IMG/VR virus record: IMGVR_UViG_3300031963_000006
Span: 151,251 to 215,250 of that record
Strand: one strand, 5' to 3'
Length of the DNA: 64,000 nt
Part shown: piece after piece, positions 11,444 to 64,000 of the stretch
Position numbering within the stretch: the stretch's first letter is position 1
Layout: every line of letters begins with the position of its first letter
Notes under the pieces: generated by a model
Told to the model about the DNA's origin: nothing
Seen by the model: only the letters and a program-made list of their open reading frames with translations
The model's database searches: none
Program-made: the position numbers and the translations under genes

Positions 11444-12244
11444 ATGAAAGAAAAAAACACCGGTATTCCAATTAATCAAGAAGAAATTCAACATTACCTA
11501 AAAGATATTCGTAAAATTAAGGTTATGACCCCCGAGAGGGAACGTGAGTTGGCTAAGATGATTCAATCTGAAAATCTAACCAAACAACAACGAGATGAAA
11601 TCAACCAAGAAATTTTGGAAGGTAATCTCAGGTTTGTTATCACGGTGGCAAAACAATATCAAAATCAAGGTTTGGATTTTCCTGACTTGATTGCCGAGGG
11701 TAACTTAGGACTATTGAAAGCCATTCAAAACTTTGATTGGAGTAAAAACTTGAGGTTTATATCATATGCGGTTTGGTGGGTTAAACAATCTATCTTACAG
11801 TCCCTCAACGACAACGCTCGTACTATTCGACTTCCAGTAAATGTGGTTCAGGACCTACAACGAGCAAAGAAAGAGGTGGAATCTAAGGGTGGTAAATTGG
11901 ATGAGAGATTTGAAATGTTACCGTCTATTATTGATTTGGATATGAACATCAATGAAGAAGGTGATACTTTGGTTGATGTTATTAAGAACGAAGACGCGGA
12001 TATGCCTGATGCGGTGTTTAATAACAAAGACGTTCTTAAGATGGAACTAGTTGGATTGTTAAACGTTTTGGATGAGAGAGAACGAATAATCATATTGGAT
12101 TATTTCGGACTATCAGGTACACCAAGAACACTCGAAGACATAGGGTCTGACTTTAATTTGACGAAAGAGAGAGTACGACAAATTAAAGAAAAGGCTCTAA
12201 GAAAACTGAGGAACGAAAGTTCGGTTTTGTTCGACTACATGTAA
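11444..12244 (+). CDS. RNA polymerase sigma-70 factor, Bacteroidota sigma-A-like
   Basis: NLRFVITVAKQYQNQG, DLIAEGNLGL, FISYAVWW, TLEDIG..TKERVRQIKEKALRKLR; no region 1.1. Confidence 0.95.
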   Translation: MKEKNTGIPINQEEIQHYLKDIRKIKVMTPERERELAKMIQSENLTKQQRDEINQEILEGNLRFVITVAKQYQNQGLDFPDLIAEGNLGLLKAIQNFDWSKNLRFISYAVWWVKQSILQSLNDNARTIRLPVNVVQDLQRAKKEVESKGGKLDERFEMLPSIIDLDMNINEEGDTLVDVIKNEDADMPDAVFNNKDVLKMELVGLLNVLDERERIIILDYFGLSGTPRTLEDIGSDFNLTKERVRQIKEKALRKLRNESSVLFDYM

Positions 12245-49081: not shown

Positions 49082-49480
49082 TTAATATACTGGTGTGTTT
49101 CTTCTGTGAGGGTAGATTGATACTTCATCAATATCAACATCAAACTTCTCACTAAACCAATCGGCAACAACATCCATAACCTTTGTTTCTCTAATTGATA
49201 CCATGAGACGGATTGTCTCTACAATATCAGGATGGATGTGTAAGTTACCAATACCATAATGTTTGCGTGCCTCCATACCAAAGTACGCGTCATCAAATTC
49301 GCCTGAACCAAAAAAGTAATATGTGATTCCCCCATTCCCTGTATTAGGGAGTAATGCAATTCTATATGCGTCACGATTATGAGGATTTACAATTTTTTTG
49401 CCATCTGATTCTGAAAATTTCTCATCCAAATATTTGTAGATGATACTATGAAGTTGAGTTTGTGTTATTATATATCTCAT
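49082..49480 (-). CDS. MKYLITESQ-family member (divergent)
   Basis: MRYIITQTQLHSIIYKYLD...VVADWFSEKF. Confidence 0.8.
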   Translation of the reverse strand: MRYIITQTQLHSIIYKYLDEKFSESDGKKIVNPHNRDAYRIALLPNTGNGGITYYFFGSGEFDDAYFGMEARKHYGIGNLHIHPDIVETIRLMVSIRETKVMDVVADWFSEKFDVDIDEVSIYPHRRNTPVY

Positions 49481-49481
49481 A

Positions 49482-49787
49482 TTAGGATAACGAATTTATT
49501 TTTAAATCATATTCTTTTTCTAAGTAAAGTGCCATCATGTCTATGAACGTGATAATTTTTATACTAAACATATCCCACTCATTACTAAAATATCCTCCAT
49601 TAAAATAATAATTATGGAGCTCACCTTCTGAGGGAGAGCCAACTAATAACTCTCCATCAGGACCCCATAATACTTTCCATTTTTCACCGTCATAATTTCT
49701 TATCTCCAATTTTGAATTCTTAAATCTTGAATCAAAAAACGGTTTCATTAGTTTGTAAAGTTGTTCTTGGTTTAAAAGGTATTCCAT
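49482..49787 (-). CDS. MKYLITESQ-family member (divergent)
   Basis: MEYLLNQEQL; TATTTAT upstream. Confidence 0.7.
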   Translation of the reverse strand: MEYLLNQEQLYKLMKPFFDSRFKNSKLEIRNYDGEKWKVLWGPDGELLVGSPSEGELHNYYFNGGYFSNEWDMFSIKIITFIDMMALYLEKEYDLKINSLS

Positions 49788-49799
49788 AACGTATAAATA

Positions 49800-50117
49800 T
49801 TAACCAGCACCGTAATCTGAGTAGGGGTATTTAATTTCAATACCAATTTTACCCTCAACCCATTTTGCAATTATCATTAAAGAACGAGTCAAGTTCAAAG
49901 AAAAGAATTCTGCAACTTCGGTTAGAATATCTGAACTTATATAACAATCATCACTCATGTAATAATATGCAATTTTTGCATATTGATTGTCTTTATAACT
50001 ACGTTCAGATTCAAAGAAATAATGACCTCCACCATCTTCACGATGATAAAAGTCCTGAGTATTAAGATACTTAAATACTATACTATCAATTTGAGATTCG
50101 GTTATTAGATATTTCAT
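49800..50117 (-). CDS. MKYLITESQ-family core paralog
   Basis: MKYLITESQIDSIVFKYLNTQDF...FFSL...IIAKWVE. Confidence 0.85.
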   Translation of the reverse strand: MKYLITESQIDSIVFKYLNTQDFYHREDGGGHYFFESERSYKDNQYAKIAYYYMSDDCYISSDILTEVAEFFSLNLTRSLMIIAKWVEGKIGIEIKYPYSDYGAG

Positions 50118-50118
50118 A

Positions 50119-50502
50119 TTAAGAGATATTAGCGTTTCTCACATCAAATACTTTATATTCGGGGAACACAACATTAAAGGCGTCTGACATTAAATATTTA
50201 CCGTGAACATACCAAAAAGGATGTGGAAGTATCTTTTCAAACAAGTCACCAAATTCTCTACTATAATATAATTCACCTGTCATACCATCCTCATATATAA
50301 CAAAAACACATATTGTTTCACCATTAGAATTGGATATGAAAATTCTATTAGTTCCATCATCATATGAATCAAATTGGTCAACAATGTAAGGAATAATTTT
50401 ATCCTTTATCTTATTGTATTGTTCCTCATATTGAAAATCCCTCCAATCCCTTTCAAGTTCGGAGATAAGTTTAAGTTGTGATTCTGTGATTATATATTTC
50501 AT
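50119..50502 (-). CDS. MKYIITESQ-leader protein with a different body
   Basis: Shares only the leader. Confidence 0.8.
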   Translation of the reverse strand: MKYIITESQLKLISELERDWRDFQYEEQYNKIKDKIIPYIVDQFDSYDDGTNRIFISNSNGETICVFVIYEDGMTGELYYSREFGDLFEKILPHPFWYVHGKYLMSDAFNVVFPEYKVFDVRNANIS

Positions 50503-50505
50503 GTT

Positions 50506-50817
50506 TTAAAAATAATATACAACGATATCTGATTGAACATCAACCGCACTATAATGTGTGCCAGTTTTACTTTCAACCCACTTAGAAATTGCGGAAATAG
50601 CATCGATATTACTCAAAGAAAAGAAAGAAACGATTTCATCCATTAATTTTCTATCAATCGTACACCAATAACTATTGAATCTAATTTGAGCGTATTCATC
50701 TTTCTCTGAATTAAGGAAATAACCGTTTATTCCATACTCCATATAAACAAAGTCCTGATTATCCAAATACTTAAAGATTAGGTTTTCAATTTGAGATTCG
50801 GTGATTAGGTATTTCAT
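50506..50817 (-). CDS. MKYLITESQ-family core paralog
   Basis: True start 50817 (track ORF over-extended); TATTTAT 5 nt upstream. Confidence 0.85.
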   Translation of the reverse strand: MKYLITESQIENLIFKYLDNQDFVYMEYGINGYFLNSEKDEYAQIRFNSYWCTIDRKLMDEIVSFFSLSNIDAISAISKWVESKTGTHYSAVDVQSDIVVYYF

Positions 50818-50842
50818 ATGATTATAAATATAACGTATTACT

Positions 50843-51160
50843 CTATCTAACGTGTACTTCCCTAACATTCGTATCCAATTTATTTTCAACCCATCTACCG
50901 ATAATATATTTAGAATCATTAAAGTCCAATGAAAAGAATGTGGTAATCTCATCAATCAATTCATGATTTATCCAACAATCACCATCTCGATAGAAATTAA
51001 TTAATGAATCAGTATATAAATCTTCACTTGAATTAAGAAAGTGAATTATATTGCTAAACCCAAAAGACGTTTTAGGTGATTTTTTTATAATAAAGTCCTG
51101 ATTATCGAGGTACTTAAAAACAACATTATCAAGCTTAGATTCGGTGATAAGATATTTCAT
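50843..51160 (-). CDS. MKYLITESQ-family core paralog
   Basis: MKYLITESKLDNVVFKYLDNQDF. Confidence 0.85.
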   Translation of the reverse strand: MKYLITESKLDNVVFKYLDNQDFIIKKSPKTSFGFSNIIHFLNSSEDLYTDSLINFYRDGDCWINHELIDEITTFFSLDFNDSKYIIGRWVENKLDTNVREVHVR

Positions 51161-51172
51161 ATGATATAAATA

Positions 51173-51502
51173 TTAGTTAGGAGTTCTTAAAGAAGAAACC
51201 ATATCTTCAGTGACAAAGAATATGTTGGTAACCTTCATTTTTAAATTATTTTCAACCCACTTACCAATAACTTTTTTAGAATTAGATTCTCGCAGAGAAA
51301 AGAAGGAAGAAATTTCGTTAACCAATTTATAAGATATAAAACACCACTCATCATTTTCATCATATCTAATCTGAGCATATTCATCATTTTCGGAATTAAC
51401 AAAAAATAAACTAACACTATCGCCGACAACAATAAAGTCCTGATTATTCAAGTACTTAAAGATTACATTATCAATTTGTGATTCGGTGATAATATATTTC
51501 AT
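51173..51502 (-). CDS. MKYLITESQ-family core paralog
   Basis: MKYIITESQIDNVIFKYLNNQDF. Confidence 0.85.
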   Translation of the reverse strand: MKYIITESQIDNVIFKYLNNQDFIVVGDSVSLFFVNSENDEYAQIRYDENDEWCFISYKLVNEISSFFSLRESNSKKVIGKWVENNLKMKVTNIFFVTEDMVSSLRTPN

Positions 51503-51524
51503 ATGATATAAATACTAGTTATAT

Positions 51525-51830
51525 CTATCTAATTATAATTTCTTTAACTCTTCTACCCAAAGTATTTTCAACCCATCTGGCAATAACATATTTAGAACCA
51601 TCAAATTCCATAGAGAAGAATTCTGCAATTTCATTAATTAACTCAAAACTCATGACACACTCACCACCACTTCTATAGTATTGGATTAATCCGCCCGAAA
51701 ATTCATCATTTTCTGAATTAACGAAGTAAGTTATATTATCACTATTCATTTTCTTAATAATAAAGTCCTGATTATCCAAATACATGAATATAAGGTTATC
51801 AATCTGTGATTCGGTGATAAGATATTTCAT
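51525..51830 (-). CDS. MKYLITESQ-family core paralog
   Basis: MKYLITESQIDNLIFMYLDNQDF. Confidence 0.85.
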   Translation of the reverse strand: MKYLITESQIDNLIFMYLDNQDFIIKKMNSDNITYFVNSENDEFSGGLIQYYRSGGECVMSFELINEIAEFFSMEFDGSKYVIARWVENTLGRRVKEIIIR

Positions 51831-51842
51831 ATGGTATAAATA

Positions 51843-52178
51843 TTAATTATAATAGGGTATTCTCAACGCAAACCACTTCGTGTTGTTGCGCCATTCGGTG
51901 TTTGTGACCTTCATTTGTAGTCTATTTTCAACCCATCTACCAATAACTGGTTCAGAATCATAATGTGACATAGAAAAGAAGGTGGAAATTTCTTCAATTA
52001 ATTTATAATGTACATAACACCAATTATCATTTTTATCATATTTAATTTGAGCGTATACATCATTCACTGAGTTCACGAAGTATATTTTTTCATCAAAGTT
52101 AATCTGAATAAAATCTTGGTTATCCAAATACTTAAAGATTACTTTATCAATTTGTGATTCGGTGATTAGGTATTTCAT
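51843..52178 (-). CDS. MKYLITESQ-family core paralog
   Basis: MKYLITESQIDKVIFKYLDNQDF. Confidence 0.85.
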   Translation of the reverse strand: MKYLITESQIDKVIFKYLDNQDFIQINFDEKIYFVNSVNDVYAQIKYDKNDNWCYVHYKLIEEISTFFSMSHYDSEPVIGRWVENRLQMKVTNTEWRNNTKWFALRIPYYN

Positions 52179-52486
52179 TTGATTAATATTACGTCTATTG
52201 TTATACCATAAACTTCATACGGGGGAAAACCTGTATTGGGGCTATAACCACTTGTTTTAATATCCAAATAAGTCAATATTGTTCTCCTAATCTCACGTTC
52301 AAAATTTCGTTCTTTTAATTCGTCAGGGTTATAATGGTTAGGGTTGGTTATGTATGAATCATCAATATCATAAAAATAAACATCAATTAATATCTCATCA
52401 TCATATTCACTCTTTCTAACTTTAATCTTTTCAGGTGAGTATAACGATTCAATCAACTTAACAATGGCTTTAATTTTACTGTTCAT
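52175..52486 (-). CDS. Unrelated gene inside the array, sharing the upstream TTTATATCATATG signal
   Basis: Start MNSKIK. Confidence 0.75.
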   Translation of the reverse strand: MNSKIKAIVKLIESLYSPEKIKVRKSEYDDEILIDVYFYDIDDSYITNPNHYNPDELKERNFEREIRRTILTYLDIKTSGYSPNTGFPPYEVYGITIDVILIK

Positions 52487-52496
52487 ATGATATAAA

Positions 52497-52826
52497 TTAC
52501 GACCATATACCACCGACGCGTTTCTGAGCCGCGGAGAGAGGTTTAATGTGAGACACCTCTACCTCTAAAGTTTTTTCAACCCATCTAGCGATAACTACTT
52601 TAGAATCAGATTTATCCATAGAAAAGAAGTCGGAAATTTGATTAATTACTTTGTCACTAAGCATACAAACTCCACTTTCTTTATTGTATACAATTATAGA
52701 GGTGACATCTCCCTCAGATTTTTTAAAGTATATTTTATTATCCTTTTTAACTTGAACTAATCCTTGACTATCCAAATACATGAATATAAAGTTATCCATT
52801 TGTGATTCTGTTATAATGTATTTCAT
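52497..52826 (-). CDS. MKYLITESQ-family core paralog
   Basis: MKYIITESQMDNFIFMYLD...FFSM...VIARWVE. Confidence 0.85.
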   Translation of the reverse strand: MKYIITESQMDNFIFMYLDSQGLVQVKKDNKIYFKKSEGDVTSIIVYNKESGVCMLSDKVINQISDFFSMDKSDSKVVIARWVEKTLEVEVSHIKPLSAAQKRVGGIWS

Positions 52827-53686: not shown

Positions 53687-54235
53687 ATGGAACAAATGAT
53701 GATTTACGGACTATATTGTCCGAATACAAATAAGCCAGTATATGTTGGGCAATCAAAGGTGGGGTTATATAGACCCTTTGCACATATAAATGAGAAGTCA
53801 CATAGTGATAAAGTAAACGAGTGGGTTAAGTTTCTAAAGAAGGATGGACAAAGTCCCGTATTAGTTATATTAGAACAAAACTTCCCAAACAAATATACAA
53901 ATGATAAGGAGTTGTTTTGGATTAATAAGTTCATCAATGACGGGAATGTATTACTAAATCAGGCGGGAATCAAACCATACTATTTCTATCACACGCAACT
54001 AAAGAACGAGAATGAGGATGATTACCTATTAGAACTCAGGAACTTTGTGAAGACGAGGAGAAAGATGTTAAAGTTAAGTCAGAAAGAACTTGCTGAAAAG
54101 TCAGGTCTCGGACTACGATTCATTAGAGAATTCGAACAGGGGACAAAGACAAACTTCCAAACTGATTCAATATATCAACTGTGTAGAATGTTCGGACGTA
54201 ATAAGATGTCAATTACATTTGTGGTAGATAATTAA
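53687..54235 (+). CDS. GIY-YIG-like domain fused to an XRE HTH
   Basis: IYGL...VYVGQS...E..WI...LLN; LSQKELAEKSGLGLRFIREFEQG. Confidence 0.8.
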   Translation: MEQMMIYGLYCPNTNKPVYVGQSKVGLYRPFAHINEKSHSDKVNEWVKFLKKDGQSPVLVILEQNFPNKYTNDKELFWINKFINDGNVLLNQAGIKPYYFYHTQLKNENEDDYLLELRNFVKTRRKMLKLSQKELAEKSGLGLRFIREFEQGTKTNFQTDSIYQLCRMFGRNKMSITFVVDN

Positions 54236-55940: not shown

Positions 55941-56400
55941 GACACAAATATACGGCGACTTCCCCATTGTACAAATCTACTTATCAACAATATTATTTGT
56001 TAAATCTCTTGGAGGATATTAATCTGTGCCGTACCTTTGGTTGATGCCTTTCTGTGTGGGGGAAACAATAAAGCATCATGCTAAGTTACGACCCCCAAGG
56101 TTAACTACCAAACAATTTAACACTTATAGTTATTAACAATCCTTGTATATATCCCCATTCTGACATGACATCATTAGAGACCATTTAACAACAGGGGGGA
56201 CCCACTATGTCAGACTGTCATAATAGGTGGGGGTATGGGGTATATAGGGGGGTGGGTCCCTATAGTGGGGGTATCCCCCCTCCCCCTCCCCGTCATATTG
56301 TCAGTAAAAAGGGGGGACAATCCCTTTTGCAAAATATGGAAATAAAATTCTGGAAAAATTTTCTGGAAAATTTTGGTATTTATATGTAAAATAATACACT

Positions 56401-56739
56401 ATGAAAAAAGTTATAAGATTAACGGAGTCTGATTTAACAAAACTTGTTAAGAGGATAATTAACGAAATGGATAATGATGATTTTTATTATAAGGCAAAAC
56501 CTGATATGAATTATTATTATGATAAATTTGATAATGTGGGTCCATCTGATGATGAATTCGGTGACTATGATGTTGATGAGTATGGTGAAGACGAATTTGA
56601 AAGATTCATGTCAAAATATCCTTTTGGGGATAAACAGAATACTTTCCCTGATGATGAACATGGAAGAAGATATTTCAAGGGGTATTCCAAATCACATGGT
56701 GGTAAATTTCCTGTATATAAAAGAAAAGGTAAAATGTAA
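56401..56739 (+). CDS. Protein with an MKKVIRLTESDL leader
   Basis: TATTTAT upstream; terminator downstream (56768-56798). Confidence 0.8.
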   Translation: MKKVIRLTESDLTKLVKRIINEMDNDDFYYKAKPDMNYYYDKFDNVGPSDDEFGDYDVDEYGEDEFERFMSKYPFGDKQNTFPDDEHGRRYFKGYSKSHGGKFPVYKRKGKM

Positions 56740-56842
56740 CCCCTCCGATGATAGTATTGTCGGACTGACCCCATCTCTAATAAAGGTGGGGTTTTTTTAT
56801 TTGATATATACTTATTGGTATAAACCTTGTTATAATTTAATT

Positions 56843-57022
56843 ATGAAAAAAATACTTATATCTTTTCTTATGATTGGTTTGTTTGGATGTGCCAGTGTTA
56901 ATGGGTCCACTTGTTGTGACTCAAAGACTGAATGTGTAAAACAAACTGAGTGTTGTGGTATGGACCACTGTGATAAAACAAAATGTGAAGGACAATGTTG
57001 TGACAAATCTTGTTGCGGTTAA
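56843..57022 (+). CDS. 59-aa Cys-rich lipoprotein
   Basis: Lipobox LFGC plus 11 further Cys; terminator after the stop. Confidence 0.7.
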   Translation: MKKILISFLMIGLFGCASVNGSTCCDSKTECVKQTECCGMDHCDKTKCEGQCCDKSCCG

Positions 57023-57196
57023 TTGTTTTTTGTAAACTAATTAAACCCCATTCCAAAAAGAGTGGGGTTTTTTATTTCCCCATATATTGACCCCCTATTC
57101 TAAAATGTCCCCCAATGTAGAAAAAAAATTTCTGGAAAAATTTTGACAATTTGGGTATTATCTTATATCATTAGGTAAATTAAAAAAATACATATT

Positions 57197-57841
57197 ATGA
57201 AAAAAATTAATTATTTATTTGCGGTTGTGTTAGCAACAATGTTTTTAACGAGCTGTACTGTTTATTCAGGAACATATCAGGTTGAACTCCAAGGAGTAGA
57301 GAGTCCCGAAAATTCAGAAGAACAATTTGGTAAAACCAAAATTGTAAATCTACAAGAGGGAGGAATAACTAAATATAGTTACGAAGATAGTCTTATTAAA
57401 ATTATTTGGTTACCTGAAAGAACCCAATTTAGTTTTAACCTAACTAACAAATCAAGTCACTCAATTAGGGTAATGTGGGATGAGGCGGTTTATGTTAATG
57501 TAAATGGAGAAAGTCAAAAAGTATTTCACTCAGGGGTAAAGTTTATCGATAGAAATAATTCTCAACCTCCTACTATTGTAGTTAAAGGGGCTAGTATTTC
57601 TGATGTGGTAATCCCTACCGATAATGTTTATTATGTAAAACCAAGTCAATACTCGGCAGGCGGATGGCAAGTAAGTGGGCTATTTATAACATCTTCTTTC
57701 TCGGCTGAGGAAATGGAAAAGGCGAAATCATCTTATGTTGGAAAAACTGTCAAAGTACTATTACCAATTAGGATTGAAAATACTAATAATGAATATTTGT
57801 TTTCTTTTAAAATTGAAAACTTTAAATACAATACCAAATAA
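57197..57841 (+). CDS. Lipoprotein
   Basis: Lipobox LTSC; TTGACA-N17-TATCAT at 57143-57171. Confidence 0.8.
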   Translation: MKKINYLFAVVLATMFLTSCTVYSGTYQVELQGVESPENSEEQFGKTKIVNLQEGGITKYSYEDSLIKIIWLPERTQFSFNLTNKSSHSIRVMWDEAVYVNVNGESQKVFHSGVKFIDRNNSQPPTIVVKGASISDVVIPTDNVYYVKPSQYSAGGWQVSGLFITSSFSAEEMEKAKSSYVGKTVKVLLPIRIENTNNEYLFSFKIENFKYNTK

Positions 57842-57958
57842 ATTTAATAAGACATTAACCCCCTTTCTTTTGATTGGGGGTTTTTTATTTTCTAAAAATT
57901 TTTTCGACGGTTCCCGATTCCCCCTACCCCCTTTTTTATTTCTGATATATTTATTGAT

Positions 57959-58495
57959 ATGAAATTTATTCTTACAGAGTCACAATACGCAGGATTAATG
58001 AAACTAATCAAAAAACATGAAGACGATTTAAGTTTTTTGAAAAGTAGCGTGGTCACATCAATTGAACATGATGTAACAGATTTATTAAACTCCAAGTTTC
58101 AAGGTAGATTTGGACACTATGGTTATATGCAATACCCCTCATTTTTTATTTATCCCGAAAAATTGGCGTCCGAACTTGCGAAATATAATGTAAGGGAACC
58201 ATTTTTGGTTATTGAGTATCATGTAAAAAAATCCACAGGTAAAGTTGAAATTAACATCTTTTGGAATTCAAACATATATTTTGATTATAAAAAAGAAAAT
58301 GGTAGATGGGAAAGACATAGACAACCCAAAAATAGTATTAAGTGGGACTATATAAATAACCCTGATGGACAAGAGGAATTCTTATCTAAATTGGAAAAGA
58401 CCATTAACGGAAGAATTAGTGAAAAGGCTCAAAACAAAATTATTAATGATTTTGAAAAACTTTATTCAGGGCCATCACCTAAGTTTTTTTCCTAA
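57959..58495 (+). CDS. Protein with an MKFILTESQ leader
   Basis: TATTTAT 4 nt upstream. Confidence 0.8.
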   Translation: MKFILTESQYAGLMKLIKKHEDDLSFLKSSVVTSIEHDVTDLLNSKFQGRFGHYGYMQYPSFFIYPEKLASELAKYNVREPFLVIEYHVKKSTGKVEINIFWNSNIYFDYKKENGRWERHRQPKNSIKWDYINNPDGQEEFLSKLEKTINGRISEKAQNKIINDFEKLYSGPSPKFFS

Positions 58496-58696
58496 ATTTT
58501 TCCCTTCGGGTTGTCAATCCCCCTACCCCCTTTTTTATTTGGTCTATTTGCTTTATCTTTGCCCAAAGATTAATTAACAATATATTTATTACTATGAAAC
58601 CTGAAGAAATCAACATTCCAAAAAACTACGTAGACAAAACTGACGAGACAAGGAACAAATTGATTCGAGATATGTTTCCTATTAGTGAAAAAAAGA

Positions 58697-59803
58697 ATGA
58701 ATCTAAAACAAAGAATTAAGTTAATCTTAAATGAAGCTTTAGGAATTCCCGATGATATTGATATGATTGTCAATATCTATACGGACCTTATAATTGATAC
58801 CATTAAAAACGATATTGATAATGTTGACTCCAAAGAAGTTCAAATCAACGTTGAAGGGTATGAAGATGGGGAAGCATTCAAATATGATTTCAAAATAAGT
58901 CCAAAAGAGTCTTGGGAGTATCTTAAAAACTCACCACTTTTCAATATGGAAGATTGGAAGAAGTTTCCAACCTTCATTAATAAAATTAGTTTTTCTTTAA
59001 TTACATTCCCTGATGGAATGTTTGAAGACCGGGGAGTTACATCCCCACAGATTGAAGCAACACATATTTTCCAACCATCAACATTTCAAGTTAAACAAGT
59101 TAAGAAATGGGGTGAAGTTTATGCTATAAGTTCATATGACTTTTCAATTAATATGAAACAGTCCGACCTTGATAATATTGAGAATATTAGAACAAAACTG
59201 AAATCAGTTATCGCTCACGAAATCTTCCACTCATATCAGTTGTATAAAAAATATAAGGGTACATCTAAAGTGGGATTTGGAAAGGAGGCCGTTATGAATT
59301 CTTTCCAACAGATTTTACAGAGTCAGTGGAACCCAGAGTGGAATAACTTTATGAGGGGGATATATTATGCTTTAAGGTTTGAACAACAAGCAAGAACCCC
59401 CCAATTATACTATGAACTCAAAGACAAAGGTATAAGTTCATATGAGGATTTTATGAGAGAACTATCAAAGACAGAATATTTTAATGAGATTAATTTTTTG
59501 AGAAACTTCTCGGCTCAAAAAATGATTGATTCCATTACAAAAATTGAAAGTTTTGAGGACCTAATTTTACAAGGGGCGAAAGGTCAAGAATTTAGAGAGA
59601 ACATAGAAAATTGGAATGAATATCTTCAGATTATTGCTCGTAAGTTAAGGAATAATGGCGTTGATGTTGATAATTTCAGGGGAATAAGTAATAGAGTTAG
59701 ACAAGACCCAAGAACCTTCTTTGAATATTGGGAAAAGTTTTTTGACAAAAGAGCCGAAGAAATGTTTAGAAGAGCAACAAGGATTTACGATAAGATTAAA
59801 TAA
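58697..59803 (+). CDS. HExxH-motif protein with an ILNE leader
   Basis: IAHEIFHSYQ...FEQQAR. Confidence 0.75.
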   Translation: MNLKQRIKLILNEALGIPDDIDMIVNIYTDLIIDTIKNDIDNVDSKEVQINVEGYEDGEAFKYDFKISPKESWEYLKNSPLFNMEDWKKFPTFINKISFSLITFPDGMFEDRGVTSPQIEATHIFQPSTFQVKQVKKWGEVYAISSYDFSINMKQSDLDNIENIRTKLKSVIAHEIFHSYQLYKKYKGTSKVGFGKEAVMNSFQQILQSQWNPEWNNFMRGIYYALRFEQQARTPQLYYELKDKGISSYEDFMRELSKTEYFNEINFLRNFSAQKMIDSITKIESFEDLILQGAKGQEFRENIENWNEYLQIIARKLRNNGVDVDNFRGISNRVRQDPRTFFEYWEKFFDKRAEEMFRRATRIYDKIK

Positions 59804-59873
59804 TTTATAACATATTTCCCTTCGGGTTGTCAATCCCCCAACCCCCTTTTTTATTCCTAGTATATTTATTGAT

Positions 59874-60218
59874 ATGAATAATATTGAACAATATAGAAAA
59901 AGGTTCTTTATGTTAATGGAGTCATCAATGGGTGATGTTAAACCATTAATCTTGGAAACCAGTTTAGATTTGAATACTGCAACCATATATTGGATGAGTT
60001 GTGGAGGTGATGAAGTTGAATTAACTCCCGATTCTAAGAAACTGTTATTACCTGGTAAGGTAATAAATAATACACAATATTATTATTTTGATTCTGAACC
60101 TAATGACGCCATTGGTGAATATAAAATTATGGAATGTCTTGGACCTGAGATTGGCAAACAAGATGATTTGTATATTGATGGGGATTCGGGTAAATTATTC
60201 TTAACTAAGAATTATTAA
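59874..60218 (+). CDS. Hypothetical protein (LME...PLILE leader)
   Basis: TATTTAT 4 nt upstream. Confidence 0.75.
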   Translation: MNNIEQYRKRFFMLMESSMGDVKPLILETSLDLNTATIYWMSCGGDEVELTPDSKKLLLPGKVINNTQYYYFDSEPNDAIGEYKIMECLGPEIGKQDDLYIDGDSGKLFLTKNY

Positions 60219-60223
60219 GAGGT

Positions 60224-60499
60224 ATGGACTACATTGTAAATTACTCACAACTTGCGGCATGCATTCGTAGAAGGTTTTCTATTGAAGACATAAATCAGAT
60301 TATACGTTCAGTTAAGGAACAGATTGAAGATGGTGAGAGTGTGGACACGGCGGTGTATGATACAATCAGACATTATATCGCATTAAAACGACCTACCCGT
60401 ATTAATGACGAGGGAACCGAACAACAATATTGGGATTCTTATATCAAATATGAAATCCCCCTTGTTGAATTTGTTAAACATGTTTTGGAATTAAAATAA
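60224..60499 (+). CDS. Hypothetical protein
   Basis: MDYIVNYSQL, leader-like. Confidence 0.7.
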   Translation: MDYIVNYSQLAACIRRRFSIEDINQIIRSVKEQIEDGESVDTAVYDTIRHYIALKRPTRINDEGTEQQYWDSYIKYEIPLVEFVKHVLELK

Positions 60500-60638
60500 T
60501 TCCTAAAATTTTTCCCTTCGGGTTATCAATCCCCCTACCCCCTTTTTTTAAAAGGGTTCCCCATTGTTGAAAAAAAATTTCTGGAAAAAATTTTGGGGAA
60601 TTGGGACTTTGTGGTATCTTTGTCAAAAATTAATCACA

Positions 60639-61562
60639 ATGAGTAAAGTTACAATGGAAATCGGACAACGTTTAATTATTGAGAAGTATGTGCAAGATGC
60701 TTATGACAGATTGAAAAATGTTCCAAACCCCAAAATGACAGATAGTCTTCATAAATTCATATGTGATTGTGTGGGACATCTTCCGGCAACCTATGGTCCT
60801 AAGATTCAGAATAAAATTATTCGTGAACTTAAAGCCATTGTTGTATCAAGTGATAAGGAACGAGGTGACTTTAGAAAGAATGTCACATTCTTTGAGGTTA
60901 AATGTTCATTCCTTTCAAAGGGGGTTAGCTATTCAATTACCAATATTCGAAATTGGCATAACTTTGACTATTATGTTCTTTGTTTTATTGATGTTACCAA
61001 TAACTTTACTCCAAACTTCTATGTTATCAAAAAGGATGATATCAATAACTTCAAACTAAGGGGGATGAACGGTACTGCCGAATCTAATACCGTTAATCAG
61101 AATGTTGGTATGCGTACCGCCATTCAAGTTGATTCCCCTGATATGGAACTTTTGAAAAGTTTGAATCTTTTGAAGGACAATAGTTTTGAATCTTTATATG
61201 AGTTTGTTGATTCATTCAAGATGAAAAAGACAAAACCTAATGGATTTAAATTTAAATTCAATGGACAGAATTTTGATAGTGATAATGTTACCGAGAACTA
61301 CATTAATTTCTTGAAATATTTTTTGTATATTAATCAGGGTTCCAATTCTTTGGGTATTCAAAACATTCAACGTTCTTTGGGTAAGTTCTTTTCTTTCAAT
61401 GTTAAAAATCTTTCAAGTTGTACAAGAAAGAAAAAACAATATGTTAAGATTATGGATACGTTCTATGTTTCAACATACACATCAACCCAAAAGAAAATTG
61501 GTCATATTCAGAAAATATGTGACTCTTATCCATATGAACTTAACTTTGAATTCTATGGTTAA
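60639..61562 (+). CDS. Possible PD-(D/E)XK endonuclease-like protein
   Basis: RGD...FEVKCS...FDYY; TATCTTTG upstream. Confidence 0.55.
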   Translation: MSKVTMEIGQRLIIEKYVQDAYDRLKNVPNPKMTDSLHKFICDCVGHLPATYGPKIQNKIIRELKAIVVSSDKERGDFRKNVTFFEVKCSFLSKGVSYSITNIRNWHNFDYYVLCFIDVTNNFTPNFYVIKKDDINNFKLRGMNGTAESNTVNQNVGMRTAIQVDSPDMELLKSLNLLKDNSFESLYEFVDSFKMKKTKPNGFKFKFNGQNFDSDNVTENYINFLKYFLYINQGSNSLGIQNIQRSLGKFFSFNVKNLSSCTRKKKQYVKIMDTFYVSTYTSTQKKIGHIQKICDSYPYELNFEFYG

Positions 61563-61673
61563 TTTGCTATCCCCCATTTCTTATTGTAGAGTGGGGGATT
61601 TTTTTCTATAAATTTTTTTCGACGGTTTCCGATTCCCCCTACCCCCTTTTTTATTTATAGTATATTTATTTAT

Positions 61674-62735
61674 ATGTCTAAAAGATTTGTAATTAGTGAA
61701 AACGAAATCCGAGAAATCAGGTCAATGTACGGATTATTAAATGAACAAGAAAGAGTTATAAATGCGTCTACATCTCCTGAAAAAATGTCCAACTTTCCTG
61801 GAAATCAAAAATTTGGTTTGAGAGGGGATAAAACTAAAGAAAATTTTTATTTCAAGTCAACATTAAAAAATTTAATATTTGCCAGTACTGGTGATGCAAC
61901 AAATTATCTCTCAAGTTTCACTCCTACAAATGATGCTAAACAATATGTTGACTACATAAAAATTGGGGATAATGAATTAACAAATCAAGGAAGTATTAGT
62001 TTTGATTTGAGAACTTTACCTTCCTCAACTGAAGTTATTGCGACTCACAATGGTTTATTGTTATTGAGAAGAATGATGAATGAATTGGGAGGACAAAAAA
62101 ATGGAAAAGTAACTTTGAGTATGAGTTCGGAGGTTAGAGAGTCGGGGCAAAAAAACTATACAATATCAGGTTTATCTTCCTCAATAATTGCCGGATTCAA
62201 TGGGTTATCATCTGTTTTGGGAGTTTTGATTGTTCCCCAACAAGAAAGAGAGAAAATAAGTGATGGATACGCTGTCCAATATTTTAAAGATAAAAGTGAC
62301 GATGAACTTAAAAGTATGGCCCTAAAATTTATGAAAAACATAACATCTTACTATTTTTTGGCAAAACAAGATGTTCCCCAAATAGATACAATAATTACTG
62401 ATAAACAATTTACAACTGCTGCTGACACAAGTGCATTTGAAACTTATTATGGTAATGGACTAACCAGAGATAATTTATCTGTTTTAAATTCATCTTGGAA
62501 AAAATTACAAGACGAGTTAAAAAGTATTATGATATCCAACATGAAATTGTATTACCCTGAGGATTTCCAAGGGTTAGCCGAGAAAGCGGCTGAGATGGTT
62601 AAATCAGCATATTCTACAGATAAGTTTAATGAAAATTACAGTAGATTATTCAAACAAAGTGAACTTGGTAGATTATCTCCAATCCAACAAGGTACAAAAA
62701 CCCAATCTTCCACTTCTTATCAATTAGGAAAGTAA
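61674..62735 (+). CDS. Protein with a VISE...LLNEQ leader
   Basis: TATTTAT 4 nt upstream. Confidence 0.8.
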   Translation: MSKRFVISENEIREIRSMYGLLNEQERVINASTSPEKMSNFPGNQKFGLRGDKTKENFYFKSTLKNLIFASTGDATNYLSSFTPTNDAKQYVDYIKIGDNELTNQGSISFDLRTLPSSTEVIATHNGLLLLRRMMNELGGQKNGKVTLSMSSEVRESGQKNYTISGLSSSIIAGFNGLSSVLGVLIVPQQEREKISDGYAVQYFKDKSDDELKSMALKFMKNITSYYFLAKQDVPQIDTIITDKQFTTAADTSAFETYYGNGLTRDNLSVLNSSWKKLQDELKSIMISNMKLYYPEDFQGLAEKAAEMVKSAYSTDKFNENYSRLFKQSELGRLSPIQQGTKTQSSTSYQLGK

Positions 62736-62737
62736 TT

Positions 62738-63022
62738 TTATTTATAAACTTTTACCGTCTTAACGTTAAACCAAGTCGAAGTTTCAGGTGCGACATAACT
62801 TTTTCCATCAATAATAATGAATTCGTTTTCATAGATTACGGTGGTGTCGCCCTGAGAAAAAACAAGTTCTTTATAAACCGTGAGAGCTGGCTCCTCAACA
62901 TATGAAGTATCAGTATAAACTGTAATTACCCTGTCACTATCGGAATCCTTGACTGACAATTGGGTTGTCTTACAAGAAAACAAGTATAGAGAAATAAAAG
63001 AGAATACGATTATTTTTTTCAT
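62738..63022 (-). CDS. Lipoprotein
   Basis: Lipobox LFSC; TATTTTTG upstream. Confidence 0.75.
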   Translation of the reverse strand: MKKIIVFSFISLYLFSCKTTQLSVKDSDSDRVITVYTDTSYVEEPALTVYKELVFSQGDTTVIYENEFIIIDGKSYVAPETSTWFNVKTVKVYK

Positions 63023-63176
63023 GTGGTTTATTATTTAACTACAAAAATACAACAAAACTAACCTAAAACAAAATTTTTTATTCTGTGTTACCAATCTCCT
63101 ACCCCCTTTTTTATTTAAATCTATATTGACATAGTAATTCATTTTGTTTATCATTATGAAAAATTAATTAAACAAT

Positions 63177-64000
63177 ATGAAAAAAACATTATTTTCTTTT
63201 ATCCTAACCGTATTGAGTATTTGTTCATTCGCTCAAAACACGGTTGTTGACATTATCGTTAACAGTGCTGAACATGACACATTGGAAGCTGCCGTTATTG
63301 CTGCAGAACTTGCCGATGATTTATCGGGACCTGGTCCATTTACAGTTTTTGCCCCAACTGATGAGGCTTTTGCGGCTCTTCCTTCAGGTACAATCGAAAC
63401 TCTACTAGCTGACCCAACTGGAACACTTGCTCAGATTCTTTTGTATCACGTTGTTGGTGGTCAAGCTCTTTCAACAGATTTGAGTGATGGTCAAATTATT
63501 GCAACACTACAAGGACAAACTGTAGAGGTTACTATTAATGCCGAGGGAGTATTCATCAACGATGCTCAAGTTATAGTTGCTGACATCACGGCTACCAACG
63601 GAGTAGTTCACGTAATTGACGCTATCCTTCTACCACCGGCTCCACAACCAACAACTACTGTTGTAGATGTAATTGTTAATAGTGATGTTCACAATACACT
63701 TGAAGCGGCTGTTGTTGCAGCAGGTTTGGTTGAAACACTTAGTGGTACTGGACCGTTCACCGTATTTGCTCCTACTGATAACGCGTTTGCCGCACTTCCT
63801 GCCGGTACAGTTGAGGCTCTTTTGGCGAACATCGGAGAACTACAAAACATATTACTTTACCACGTTGCGTCAGGTTCAGTTTTGTCAACTGATTTGACAA
63901 ATGGTCAAGAAATTCCAACTTTAACGTTCTTCCCTCCACTTGTTGTAACAATTGATAACAATGGTGTTATGATTAATAACGCAATGGTTACAGTTGCTGA
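63177..64000 (+). CDS. Secreted tandem fasciclin (FAS1) domain protein, runs off the window
   Basis: Not in the ORF track. Signal peptide; twice GPFTVFAPTD.AF and ILLYHV; NGVVHVID; TTGACA-N17-TATCAT at 63126-63154. Confidence 0.92.
   Translation, partial: MKKTLFSFILTVLSICSFAQNTVVDIIVNSAEHDTLEAAVIAAELADDLSGPGPFTVFAPTDEAFAALPSGTIETLLADPTGTLAQILLYHVVGGQALSTDLSDGQIIATLQGQTVEVTINAEGVFINDAQVIVADITATNGVVHVIDAILLPPAPQPTTTVVDVIVNSDVHNTLEAAVVAAGLVETLSGTGPFTVFAPTDNAFAALPAGTVEALLANIGELQNILLYHVASGSVLSTDLTNGQEIPTLTFFPPLVVTIDNNGVMINNAMVTVA

What the first reader, a model, noticed from the sequence alone, without database searches (positions are those of the whole stretch)
57894..63116. Polar ~45-bp C-rich repeat delimits six consecutive gene cassettes
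Seen: AAATTTTT(C)..CGG(G)TT..C.AT.CCCCTACCCCCTTTTTTATT recurs at ~57894, 58494, 59815, 60504, 61609 and 63071. It is always intergenic and in the same orientation, 0.6-1.5 kb apart, each followed by a promoter and one or two unrelated genes. There are two sub-types (ttcccttcgggtt.tcaat vs ttcgacggtt.ccgatt). It has no long stem, so it is not a terminator; real terminators sit just upstream of copies 1 and 5. It occurs only right of the 56.2 kb G/C-tract element. Inference: recombination sites for a cassette array, or polar protein-binding sites for replication, packaging or DNA entry.
Basis: partly seen in the sequence, partly recalled or inferred. Interest (0 to 1): 0.7.

Follow-up and report, generated by a model that had tools for sequence, protein, structure and literature searches.

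The report
Shuffling promoter cassettes in a giant phage
A roughly 47-base C-rich repeat in a 321-kb T4-related phage of Bacteroidota is most likely the upstream half of a portable promoter placed in front of accessory genes, and related phages have swapped those genes exactly at the repeat, as T4 does with its known mobile regulatory cassettes.

Summary
There are six same-strand intergenic copies in the window (0.05 expected by chance). The whole 321-kb phage genome has eight copies plus one decayed copy, all within 10 kb. The core is conserved in dozens of related uncultivated freshwater jumbo-phage contigs, and all copies point the same way in every locus that holds two or more.

The repeat does not fold, and the genome has no tyrosine recombinase, so it is neither a terminator nor an integron site. 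It starts at the stop codon of the gene before it. The C block CCCCCTACCCCC usually ends 13-19 nt (mode 15) before the phage's general TATTTAT box, and that box lies 11-13 nt before an ATG. I read it as the upstream part of a phage-specific promoter with a leaderless or short-leader start. This rests on geometry only; no transcription start was mapped.

Relatives carry the same genes in different orders, and homology begins and ends at the repeat. Contigs from other lakes also diverge at its edges. The phage is T4-related, and the closest known things are T4 PeSLs and the T-even internal-protein loci.

The parts
57894..57941 (+). Repeat copy 1 (A/T tract, CGACGGTTCCCGATT spacer, C block 57920-57931, T run)
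58494..58540 (+). Repeat copy 2 (CCCTTCGGGTTGTCAAT sub-type). It begins inside the TAA stop of the gene before it. The next TATATTTAT box is about 50 nt on, at 58581-58589, with an ATG at 58594.
59810..59856 (+). Repeat copy 3 (C block CCCCCAACCCCC)
60506..60552 (+). Repeat copy 4. It is followed not by the usual box but by a second promoter type (see 60568-60638).
61610..61656 (+). Repeat copy 5 (same sub-type as copy 1)
63070..63116 (+). Repeat copy 6, degenerate (TCTCCTACCCCC). The gene upstream is on the opposite strand, so this copy can only serve the downstream gene.
57946..57955 (+). TATATTTATT box, starting 14 nt after the C block of copy 1 (16 nt to the TATTTAT core); ATG at 57959. 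The same arrangement occurs at 59861-59870 (ATG 59874) and 61661-61670 (ATG 61674).
57857..57893 (+). Intrinsic terminator-like hairpin plus T run just before copy 1. A second one lies at 61569-61606, before copy 5.
60568..60638 (+). Second promoter type: TTTCTGGAAAAAATTTTG, 19 nt, TATCTTTG, which fits the host-like -33/-7 pattern. Also present at 56337-56400 and 57119-57196.
   Evidence: (families D12, D14)
57959..58495 (+). Cassette gene of 178 aa with no Pfam or PHROG family. This is the gene found in four different contexts in relatives.
58594..59803 (+). Cassette after copy 2: a 41-aa ORF (58594-58719) overlapping a 368-aa ORF (58697-59803) that contains an HEIFH motif. No family match.
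59874..60499 (+). Cassette after copy 3: 114-aa and 91-aa ORFs with no family match
60639..61562 (+). Cassette after copy 4: 307-aa ORF with no family match
61674..62735 (+). Cassette after copy 5: 353-aa ORF with no family match
63177..64000 (+). Gene after copy 6: fasciclin-domain protein with a type IX secretion C-terminal sorting domain. It runs on past the window's end.
56229..56287 (.). The G/C-tract hub holds one inverted C-block-like 12-mer (GGGGGTATGGGG, 56229-56240) and one direct degenerate one (56275-56287). It lies between diverging transcription units.
11444..12244 (+). Phage sigma-70-family factor (regions 1.2, 2 and 4), a candidate reader of these promoters

Best explanation
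The repeat is the upstream half of a compact intergenic regulatory module that is specific to this phage lineage. The module runs: stop codon of the previous gene inside an A/T tract, a variable 8-12 nt spacer, CAAT or CGAT, the near-invariant block CCCCCTACCCCC, a T run, the phage's general -10-like box TATTTAT(A/T), then an ATG 3-14 nt further on.

Inferred, not shown: host RNA polymerase, redirected by a phage factor, starts transcription just after the box and makes leaderless or short-leader mRNAs. The redirecting factor could be the phage's own sigma factor or an activator that binds the C block. In the commonest arrangement the C block occupies the -35 region, where Bacteroidota promoters normally carry TTTG.

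Because the module is repeated in one orientation before many accessory genes, it also supplies short stretches of homology. Related phages have exchanged, gained and lost gene cassettes at these stretches. This exchange is shown by comparison; that it proceeds by homologous recombination is inferred.
For: Polarity and locality:
- The genome has 8 forward and 0 reverse copies.
- In 30 related loci with two or more copies, all copies share one strand.
- Five related 223-322 kb records have 2-4 copies each, on one strand, within 1-5 kb.

Promoter geometry:
- In 87 distinct instances, the first TATTTAT or TAnnTTTG box starts 13-19 nt (mode 15) after the C block in 54%, against 1.8% for random positions.
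- That spacing stays the same whether the ATG is 27-30 or 35-43 nt away.
- The same box is the dominant upstream motif across the genome: ATATTTAT occurs in 59 of 169 upstream regions. It precedes the terminase and portal genes.
- The box sits 11-13 nt before the ATG in about 27 of 100 promoters, which suggests leaderless starts.

The module belongs to the downstream gene:
- Copy 6 and five relatives' copies follow a gene on the opposite strand.
- No clear case has a convergent gene downstream.

Selection and context:
- The core is identical in phages whose adjoining coding sequence is only 77-83% identical.
- The phage has a sigma factor with regions 2 and 4, and six related large (223-322 kb) records all have an ortholog.
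- No Rpb1, Rpb2 or T7-type polymerase domain was found.

Shuffling:
- Homology to three different relatives runs from 57894-57919 to 58540-58549, with unrelated flanks.
- The SAM-lyase block ends at 65695, exactly where copy 8 begins.
- Contigs from other lakes have loose ends at 57886, 58540, 60503/60504 and 63100, and hybrid copies joined within the C block or T run.
Against: - No transcription start was mapped. RNA data hold only six short contigs; one starts at 57954, 5 nt before the ATG, which is an anecdote.
- The spacing is not rigid. In about 10% of instances a host-type TAnnTTTG box starts only 8-9 nt after the C block. Copies 2 and 4 are followed by other promoter types 45-60 nt away. 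The upstream half may therefore be an independent binding site rather than a -35 element.
- The fixed spacing could partly reflect inheritance of whole modules.
- Other TATTTAT promoters do without any C block, and some relatives have a single copy. What the block adds is unknown.
- Genes that lack the repeat are also shuffled, so the repeat is one of several recombination substrates.
- The related loci were found by searching for the exact 18-mer, which inflates the apparent invariance of the C block.
Confidence: 0.6

Rival explanations
1. The C block is an operator for a phage repressor or timing regulator. It would be an orientation-dependent roadblock, like the mycobacteriophage L5 'stoperators', that switches these accessory genes off or insulates them, rather than a site that recruits polymerase.
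For: A near-invariant asymmetric 12-mer implies a sequence-specific protein. It is strictly co-oriented with transcription. Its position overlaps or abuts the promoter. It occurs before three different promoter types. Related 12-mers lie in both orientations at the divergent hub at 56.2 kb.
Against: No candidate repressor was identified. The sites are few (1-8) and local, not spread over the genome. The genome has no tyrosine-recombinase (integrase) gene, so a lysogeny repressor is not indicated. This reading is compatible with the promoter-module reading and is not exclusive of it.
Confidence: 0.12
2. The upstream half is the 3' boundary of the preceding cassette. It would be a hairpin-less, factor-dependent (Rho-type) terminator or insulator made of pyrimidine-rich, G-poor RNA followed by a U run. 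The whole module would then be a terminator-plus-promoter composite like a PeSL.
For: The C block starts a tight 19-31 nt (mode 22) after the upstream stop codon. The strand is almost all pyrimidine. Most modules lack an intrinsic terminator. The upstream half is independent of the promoter type that follows it. Elsewhere in the genome, terminator-plus-box composites have the same T-run-to-box layout.
Against: The full module persists where the upstream gene is on the other strand (copy 6 and five relatives). The last gene before a convergent gene (61674-62735) has no module after it. Rho-loading sites are not normally conserved base for base. Copies 1 and 5 have a strong intrinsic terminator directly upstream, which would make a second terminator redundant.
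Confidence: 0.1
3. The repeats are dedicated site-specific recombination sites of an integron-like cassette system.
For: Polar repeats bound cassettes whose content differs among relatives, with breakpoints at the repeats.
Against: There is no tyrosine recombinase anywhere in the genome. There is no attC-like inverted repeat or fold. Each cassette has its own promoter-like box. Crossover points vary from the A/T tract to beyond the box, as expected for homologous exchange. No circular-excision joint was seen.
Confidence: 0.04
4. The repeats are polar sites for replication, packaging or stepwise DNA entry.
For: Only their strict polarity and their position to one side of the G/C-rich hub.
Against: They are confined to 10 kb of 321 kb and number 1-4 in relatives. 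They are tied to gene starts at a fixed distance. Their polarity simply follows transcription. They lie far from the record's terminal repeats.
Confidence: 0.03

Closest known systems
PeSLs (promoter-early stem-loops), the mobile regulatory cassettes of T4-type phages (Arbiol et al. 2010, PMC2839356; Comeau et al. 2014, PMC4122927)
   Same: Both are short conserved intergenic modules that start at the upstream stop codon in an A/T-rich stretch, contain a promoter, and end at the next start codon. Both are concentrated in hyperplastic regions in front of ORFans, and differences between relatives break at them (for PeSLs; here). The phage here is itself T4-related.
   Different: There is no stem-loop inside the module. 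The promoter is not the host consensus; it combines a phage-type TATTTAT box with an unusual C-rich block. There is no Shine-Dalgarno sequence, and starts appear leaderless. The host is Bacteroidota. There is no sequence homology to PeSLs, and no mini-circles were seen.
Conserved flanking elements of the T-even internal-protein (IP) loci (Repoila et al. 1994, as described in PMC2839356 and PMC12373910)
   Same: Both are small polymorphic loci whose cassettes are flanked by conserved transcription-control blocks that are not host-consensus promoters and lack strong G/C stems. The T-even proteins share only an N-terminal leader. Here, genes behind the repeat are enriched for a few shared N-terminal leader peptides, and the phage has a gp21-type prohead protease.
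   Different: Here there are several leader families rather than one. Packaging into the capsid and cleavage are untested. There is no sequence similarity to the T4 leader.
T4 middle promoters (a MotA box at about -30 replacing the -35 element; review PMC2988021)
   Same: A normal -10-type box is combined with a phage-specific element in the -35 region, in a T4-type phage that uses host polymerase.
   Different: MotA and AsiA homologs were not sought. The element is about 45 bp long, not 9 bp. Its spacing is looser. This comparison rests on my own knowledge of T4, not on a test made here.
Integron attC sites
   Same: Polar repeats lie between gene cassettes.
   Different: There is no integrase, no hairpin-forming inverted repeat, and the cassettes carry their own promoters.
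Mycobacteriophage L5 stoperators and cluster K start-associated sequences (from my own knowledge)
   Same: Short asymmetric intergenic repeats are oriented with transcription and lie close to gene starts.
   Different: Those are 13-bp sites present genome-wide and tied to a known repressor or to translation starts. This is a local 45-bp module with no known binding protein.

Membership tests
PeSL-type mobile regulatory cassettes | Repeated intergenic motif concentrated in a hyperplastic region, mostly directly upstream of ORFans | tested here: met
   8 copies within 10 kb. The in-window cassette genes have no Pfam or PHROG family; two further genes behind copies do match Pfam domains (a fasciclin/T9SS protein after copy 6, a SAM lyase after copy 7). 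Gene neighbours are highly variable among relatives.
PeSL-type mobile regulatory cassettes | Contains a functional promoter with an A/T-rich upstream region | tested here: inconclusive
   The A/T tract and the genome-wide TATTTAT box lie at a preferred spacing. Activity was not measured and RNA data are too thin. The promoter is not the host consensus type.
PeSL-type mobile regulatory cassettes | Contains a stable stem-loop acting as terminator or attenuator | tested here: not met
   The six copies fold no better than shuffles, except weakly for copy 3. Only copies 1 and 5 have a separate terminator upstream.
PeSL-type mobile regulatory cassettes | Insertions, deletions and replacements between related phages break at the motif | tested here: met
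   Homology blocks are bounded by the repeats. Metagenome contigs have loose ends and hybrid copies at the repeat edges.
PeSL-type mobile regulatory cassettes | Mini-circles formed by exchange between neighbouring copies | tested here: inconclusive
   No circular joint appeared among assembled contigs of four DNA runs. The one 'goes back' joint is explained by a paralogous promoter lying outside the stretch that was laid. Contigs are a poor test for rare circles.
T-even internal-protein (IP) loci | Each cassette protein begins with a conserved leader that targets it to the capsid | tested here: inconclusive
   53% of genes behind the repeat have one of four leader types, against 20% of other ORFs. 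The motif hydrophobic-hydrophobic-[N/S/T]-E occurs in residues 5-35 of 32 of 303 proteins, against 14 of 303 in residues 36-66. There are several leaders rather than one, and their function is untested.
T-even internal-protein (IP) loci | T4-type head with a gp21-family maturation protease | tested here: met
   Peptidase_S77 at 87.6 bits, Gp23 at 212 bits, and portal and large terminase matches.
T-even internal-protein (IP) loci | Proteins are packaged in the capsid and injected | not testable with these tools
   This needs virion proteomics.
Integron (IntI plus attC) | Tyrosine recombinase next to the array | tested here: not met
   PF00589 has no match in the 321-kb genome, while the control genomes all match.
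Integron (IntI plus attC) | attC: imperfect inverted repeats that fold as single strands | tested here: not met
   No stable fold.
Intrinsic terminator | G+C-rich hairpin directly followed by a U run | tested here: not met
   A U run is present but no hairpin. None of the six repeat copies is called by the terminator scan.
Standard Bacteroidota sigma-A promoter (-33 TTTG, -7 TAnnTTTG) | TTTG about 19-21 nt upstream of TAnnTTTG | tested here: not met
   In the main class the box is TATTTAT(A/T), without the final G, and the -33 position is occupied by the C block. True host-type promoters occur nearby, for example at 60568-60622.
L5-type stoperators | Many asymmetric sites across the genome, bound by the phage repressor | tested here: not met
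   The co-orientation with transcription is met, but the sites are local and few. No repressor is known.

The most novel reading that the evidence does not exclude
The array is the Bacteroidota counterpart of the T-even internal-protein loci. The C-block modules would head genes for proteins that carry N-terminal leaders ending in hydrophobic-hydrophobic-(N/S/T)-E. The phage's gp21-type protease would cut off these leaders after they have carried the proteins into the capsid. The locus would then be a swappable arsenal of injected anti-defence proteins; the SAM-lyase-like gene behind copy 7 would be one of them. A dedicated phage factor would read the C block. A still more remote reading also remains open: the C block plus U run could be half of a terminator that is completed in trans by G-rich RNA from the 56.2-kb hub.
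Probability: 0.2. Interest if true: 0.7.

Novelty: new variant of a known kind. Interest (0 to 1): 0.5.

Why it matters
This would extend the mobile regulatory cassette principle, so far described in T4-type phages of Proteobacteria, to very distant T4-related jumbo phages of freshwater Bacteroidota. The promoter grammar there is different: no stem-loop, a C-rich block where the -35 element would be, and leaderless starts.

In practice the 18-mer is a sequence tag. It picks out the hyperplastic accessory-gene region in dozens of uncultivated phage contigs. That region is where anti-defence and host-takeover genes are likely to sit; one cassette is a SAM-lyase homolog. The tag also points to an unknown DNA-binding specificity, either of the phage sigma factor or of another factor, that could be tested directly.

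Tried and rejected
- Similarity to deposited phages: blastn of 56000-63200 against 50,697 phage records found nothing.
- Families for the cassette proteins: Pfam and PHROGs gave no family for the in-window cassette proteins. A homolog search for the 112-aa leader protein returned only unnamed metagenome proteins.
- RNA families: Rfam on 53.5-64 kb gave only sub-threshold noise, and there are no tRNAs.
- RNA evidence: two metatranscriptomes hold 5-8% of the sampled words, and six short contigs were laid. This is too little to map starts or ends.
- Phage-encoded polymerase: no Rpb1, Rpb2 or T7-type domain (the T7 model matched none of the control genomes, so it is uninformative). A crude scan of large ORFs for a DxDGD motif found nothing convincing.
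- E. coli-type promoter scan: 45 found against 36 expected, and it is not suited to this host.
- Structured RNA at the 56.2-kb hub: neither strand folds better than shuffles.
- Bacterial genomes: the 18-mer occurs in 54 stretches but in other sequence contexts, about half of them an unrelated hairpin (CCCCC-TTTTTT-AA-GGGGG). This gives no sign of a host site or prophage.
- Literature: no paper among those listed holds the motif in a phage or promoter context, and none holds the leader peptides meaningfully.
- The 'joints': I first read them as deletions between copies. Their short side is only 20-52 nt, that is, the repeat itself. They show hybrid repeat-cassette combinations, not proven deletions.


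Full report
**What the window is.** The window is bases 151,383-215,382 of a 321,403-bp IMG/VR virus record with direct terminal repeats, estimated complete. G+C is about 31%. The same DNA occurs in many lake and freshwater metagenomes.

The phage is a distant relative of T4. It has a large terminase and a portal, a gp21-type prohead protease (Peptidase_S77, 87.6 bits) and a gp23-type major capsid protein (212 bits). Its terminase is 24-29% identical to those of uncultured huge phages, Flavobacterium phages and other T4-like phages.

The host is very probably a member of the Bacteroidota. The fasciclin protein that begins at 63177 ends in a type IX secretion sorting domain. No multisubunit or T7-type RNA polymerase domain was found. 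The phage does encode a sigma-70-family protein with regions 1.2, 2 and 4 at window 11444-12244.

**The observation.** The six copies are at the stated places and share 72-100% identity over 47 nt. The core CCCCCTACCCCCTTTTTT matches six times on the + strand, with 0.05 expected. In the whole genome there are 8 forward and 0 reverse matches, all between 209.3 and 217.1 kb. A ninth module at 219.0 kb has lost its C block but keeps the T run and box.

The repeat does not fold. The hairpins just before copies 1 and 5 do.

**Conservation elsewhere.** The exact 18-mer occurs in 66 stretches of the IMG/VR collection. Most of these share the long consensus: A/T tract (AAAAAATAATTTTTTTT), CCGTTGTTCCAAT or a variant, the C block, a T run, then (G/A)TTTT..GTATTTAT and an ATG.

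In all 30 loci with two or more copies, every copy is on the same strand. Five related records of 223-322 kb have 2-4 copies each, on one strand and within 1-5 kb, and all five encode an ortholog of the sigma factor at 68-89% identity. More distant fragments have single copies; one 74-kb fragment has two on opposite strands.

Bacterial genomes do not hold the family-type module. There the 18-mer lies in other contexts, about half of them an unrelated hairpin element.

**Anatomy.** The TAA within the A/T tract is the stop codon of the gene before. The C block begins 19-31 nt (mode 22) after that stop.

Downstream, the first TATTTAT or TAnnTTTG box starts 13-19 nt (mode 15) after the C block in 54% of 87 distinct instances. 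For random positions the figure is 1.8%. This spacing holds whether the ATG is 27-30 or 35-43 nt from the C block. The block is therefore positioned relative to the box, not relative to the start codon.

The same box is the commonest upstream motif in the genome: ATATTTAT occurs in 59 of 169 upstream regions. It precedes the late genes for terminase and portal. It very often lies 11-13 nt before the ATG, which fits leaderless messages. Those other promoters have no C block. A second, host-like promoter class (TTTG, 19 nt, TAnnTTTG) also occurs, three times in this region.

If transcription starts a few bases after the box, the C block covers about -39 to -28. That is where Bacteroidota promoters carry TTTG; this comparison rests on established knowledge of the -33/-7 promoter.

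**Which gene the module belongs to.** Copy 6 and five relatives' copies follow a gene on the opposite strand yet keep the whole module. The gene at 61674-62735, which is followed by a convergent gene, has no module behind it. This asymmetry favours a 5' (promoter) role over a 3' (terminator) role.

**Limits of the promoter reading.**
- In about 10% of instances a host-type box starts only 8-9 nt after the C block.
- Copies 2 and 4 are joined to other promoter types further away. The upstream half behaves as a separable unit that can sit before three promoter types.
- This fits a binding site for a phage factor better than a rigid -35 hexamer. It keeps two rivals alive: a repressor operator, and a hairpin-less factor-dependent terminator.
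- RNA evidence is almost absent.

**Cassettes.** I predicted ORFs in the related loci and clustered them. The same gene families recur in different orders. The 178-aa gene at 57959-58495 has four different left and four different right neighbours and always has a repeat in front of it.

At the DNA level, homology to three different relatives runs from 57894-57919 to 58540-58549. That is from copy 1 to the end of copy 2, at 77-83% identity, with unrelated flanks. The same gene carries different spacer sub-types in different phages. Exchanges have therefore occurred inside the module, near the C block and T run.

The block holding the SAM-lyase-like gene ends at 65695, exactly where copy 8 begins. 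Contigs from four other DNA runs stop matching the window at 57886, 58540, 60503/60504 and 63100. They also include hybrids in which one copy's upstream half is fused, within the C block or T run, to another copy's downstream flank. The short sides of these joints are only the repeat itself, so they are not proof of deletions.

Genes without the repeat are equally mobile. Other small conserved pieces also recur across loci: terminators, the TTTCTGGAAAA promoter, and the first 25-30 codons of several genes. The repeat is therefore one of several homology substrates in a hyperplastic region.

There is no tyrosine recombinase in the genome, and the crossover points vary. Homologous recombination is the economical mechanism.

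**Comparison with what is known.** The closest described things are the PeSLs of T4-type phages. These are compact modules that run from the upstream stop codon through an A/T-rich stretch, a promoter and a stem-loop to the next start. They cluster before ORFans in hyperplastic regions and mediate modular shuffling.

Equally close are the analogous elements at the T-even internal-protein loci. These are described as not host-consensus-like and as lacking strong G/C stems. The proteins of those loci share only an N-terminal capsid-targeting leader.

The present module meets the distribution and breakpoint criteria of a PeSL but fails the stem-loop criterion and has a different promoter grammar. 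I therefore call it a new variant of that kind, not a member by homology.

**A side observation.** Genes behind the repeat often begin with one of a few shared leaders: MKYLITESQ; MKKVIRLTESDL..RVINE; MKRLIISEEEK; MNNI..Y..RF..MESTMGDV. They do so in 53% of cases, against 20% for other ORFs. These leaders end in hydrophobic-hydrophobic-(N/S/T)-E, a motif enriched near N-termini. From my own knowledge, T4's gp21 protease cuts after (L/I)-x-E.

In a phage with a gp21-type protease, this suggests capsid-targeted, processed proteins like the T4 internal proteins. This is untested. I give it as the most novel reading that remains open.

**Verdict.** The cassette interpretation is right as evolutionary behaviour and wrong as a dedicated recombination system. 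The best mechanism is a portable, phage-specific promoter module. Its polarity is simply the direction of transcription, and its repetition makes the region recombine.

Noticed in passing
window 49082-52826 (- strand) and genome 207.8-226 kb; genome-wide list: Many small proteins share a few N-terminal leader peptides: MKYLITESQ; MKKVIRLTESDLxRIVKRVINE; MKRLIISEEEK..LLNE; MNNIxxYKxRFYGLMESTMGDVxPIxxE. Their bodies are unrelated. The leaders end in hydrophobic-hydrophobic-[N/S/T]-E, which occurs in residues 5-35 of 32 of 303 proteins against 14 of 303 in residues 36-66. With a gp21-type protease in the genome, this may be a capsid-targeting or propeptide signal.
   Followed up: partly
window 55980-56260: This non-coding stretch is almost invariant between this phage and two related contigs whose neighbouring genes are about 72% identical. 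It contains inverted TGACAT/ATGTCA repeats and G runs. It has no Rfam match and folds no better than shuffles on either strand. Part of it is the promoter of the leftward gene; the rest is unexplained and could be an origin or a regulatory hub.
   Followed up: partly
L077:1460-2077 (genome 216460-217077, just beyond the window, behind repeat copy 7): A 205-aa protein matches the S-adenosylmethionine lyase family (PF23780, E 2.5e-9, above the curated cut-off). This is the family of the phage T3 anti-restriction enzyme.
   Followed up: no
whole genome; examples at window 53687, 57959 and 59874: The genome-wide promoter-like box TATTTAT(A/T) lies a sharp 11-13 nt before the ATG in about 27 of 100 upstream regions. 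This implies that many messages are leaderless. The box also precedes the terminase and portal genes.
   Followed up: partly
window 49082-52826, - strand: A tandem array of about ten paralogous genes of roughly 100-130 aa (MKYLITESQIDN...) has 320-700 bp periodicity. It was found as repeat families D1-D5.
   Followed up: no
window 63177-64000 and on to genome 215701: The phage carries a two-domain fasciclin protein with a signal peptide and a type IX secretion sorting domain. This looks like a host-like gene that would be secreted by the infected Bacteroidota cell.
   Followed up: partly
window 53687-54235: A 182-aa protein has a C-terminal Cro/C1-type helix-turn-helix and an N-terminus that reads like a GIY-YIG nuclease motif (IYGLY...VYVGQS). 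The nuclease part has no Pfam support. It lies 2 kb left of the hub and is a possible regulator or homing-type nuclease.
   Followed up: no
loci L085, L086, L100, L102, L103, L109, L112, L122, L130, L131 (one Bacteroidota MAG) and scattered other bacteria: The same 18-mer occurs in bacteria inside a different repeated element, CAT-CCCCCTACCCCC-TTTTTT-AAGGGGGAAT. There the second C run pairs with the G run as a hairpin. One metagenome-assembled genome has more than ten copies. It is unrelated to the phage module.
   Followed up: no
genome 12558-12722, - strand (outside the window): A 250-aa ORF gives a weak second match to sigma-70 region 2 (E 0.05). It could be a diverged late sigma factor of the gp55 kind.
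   Followed up: no
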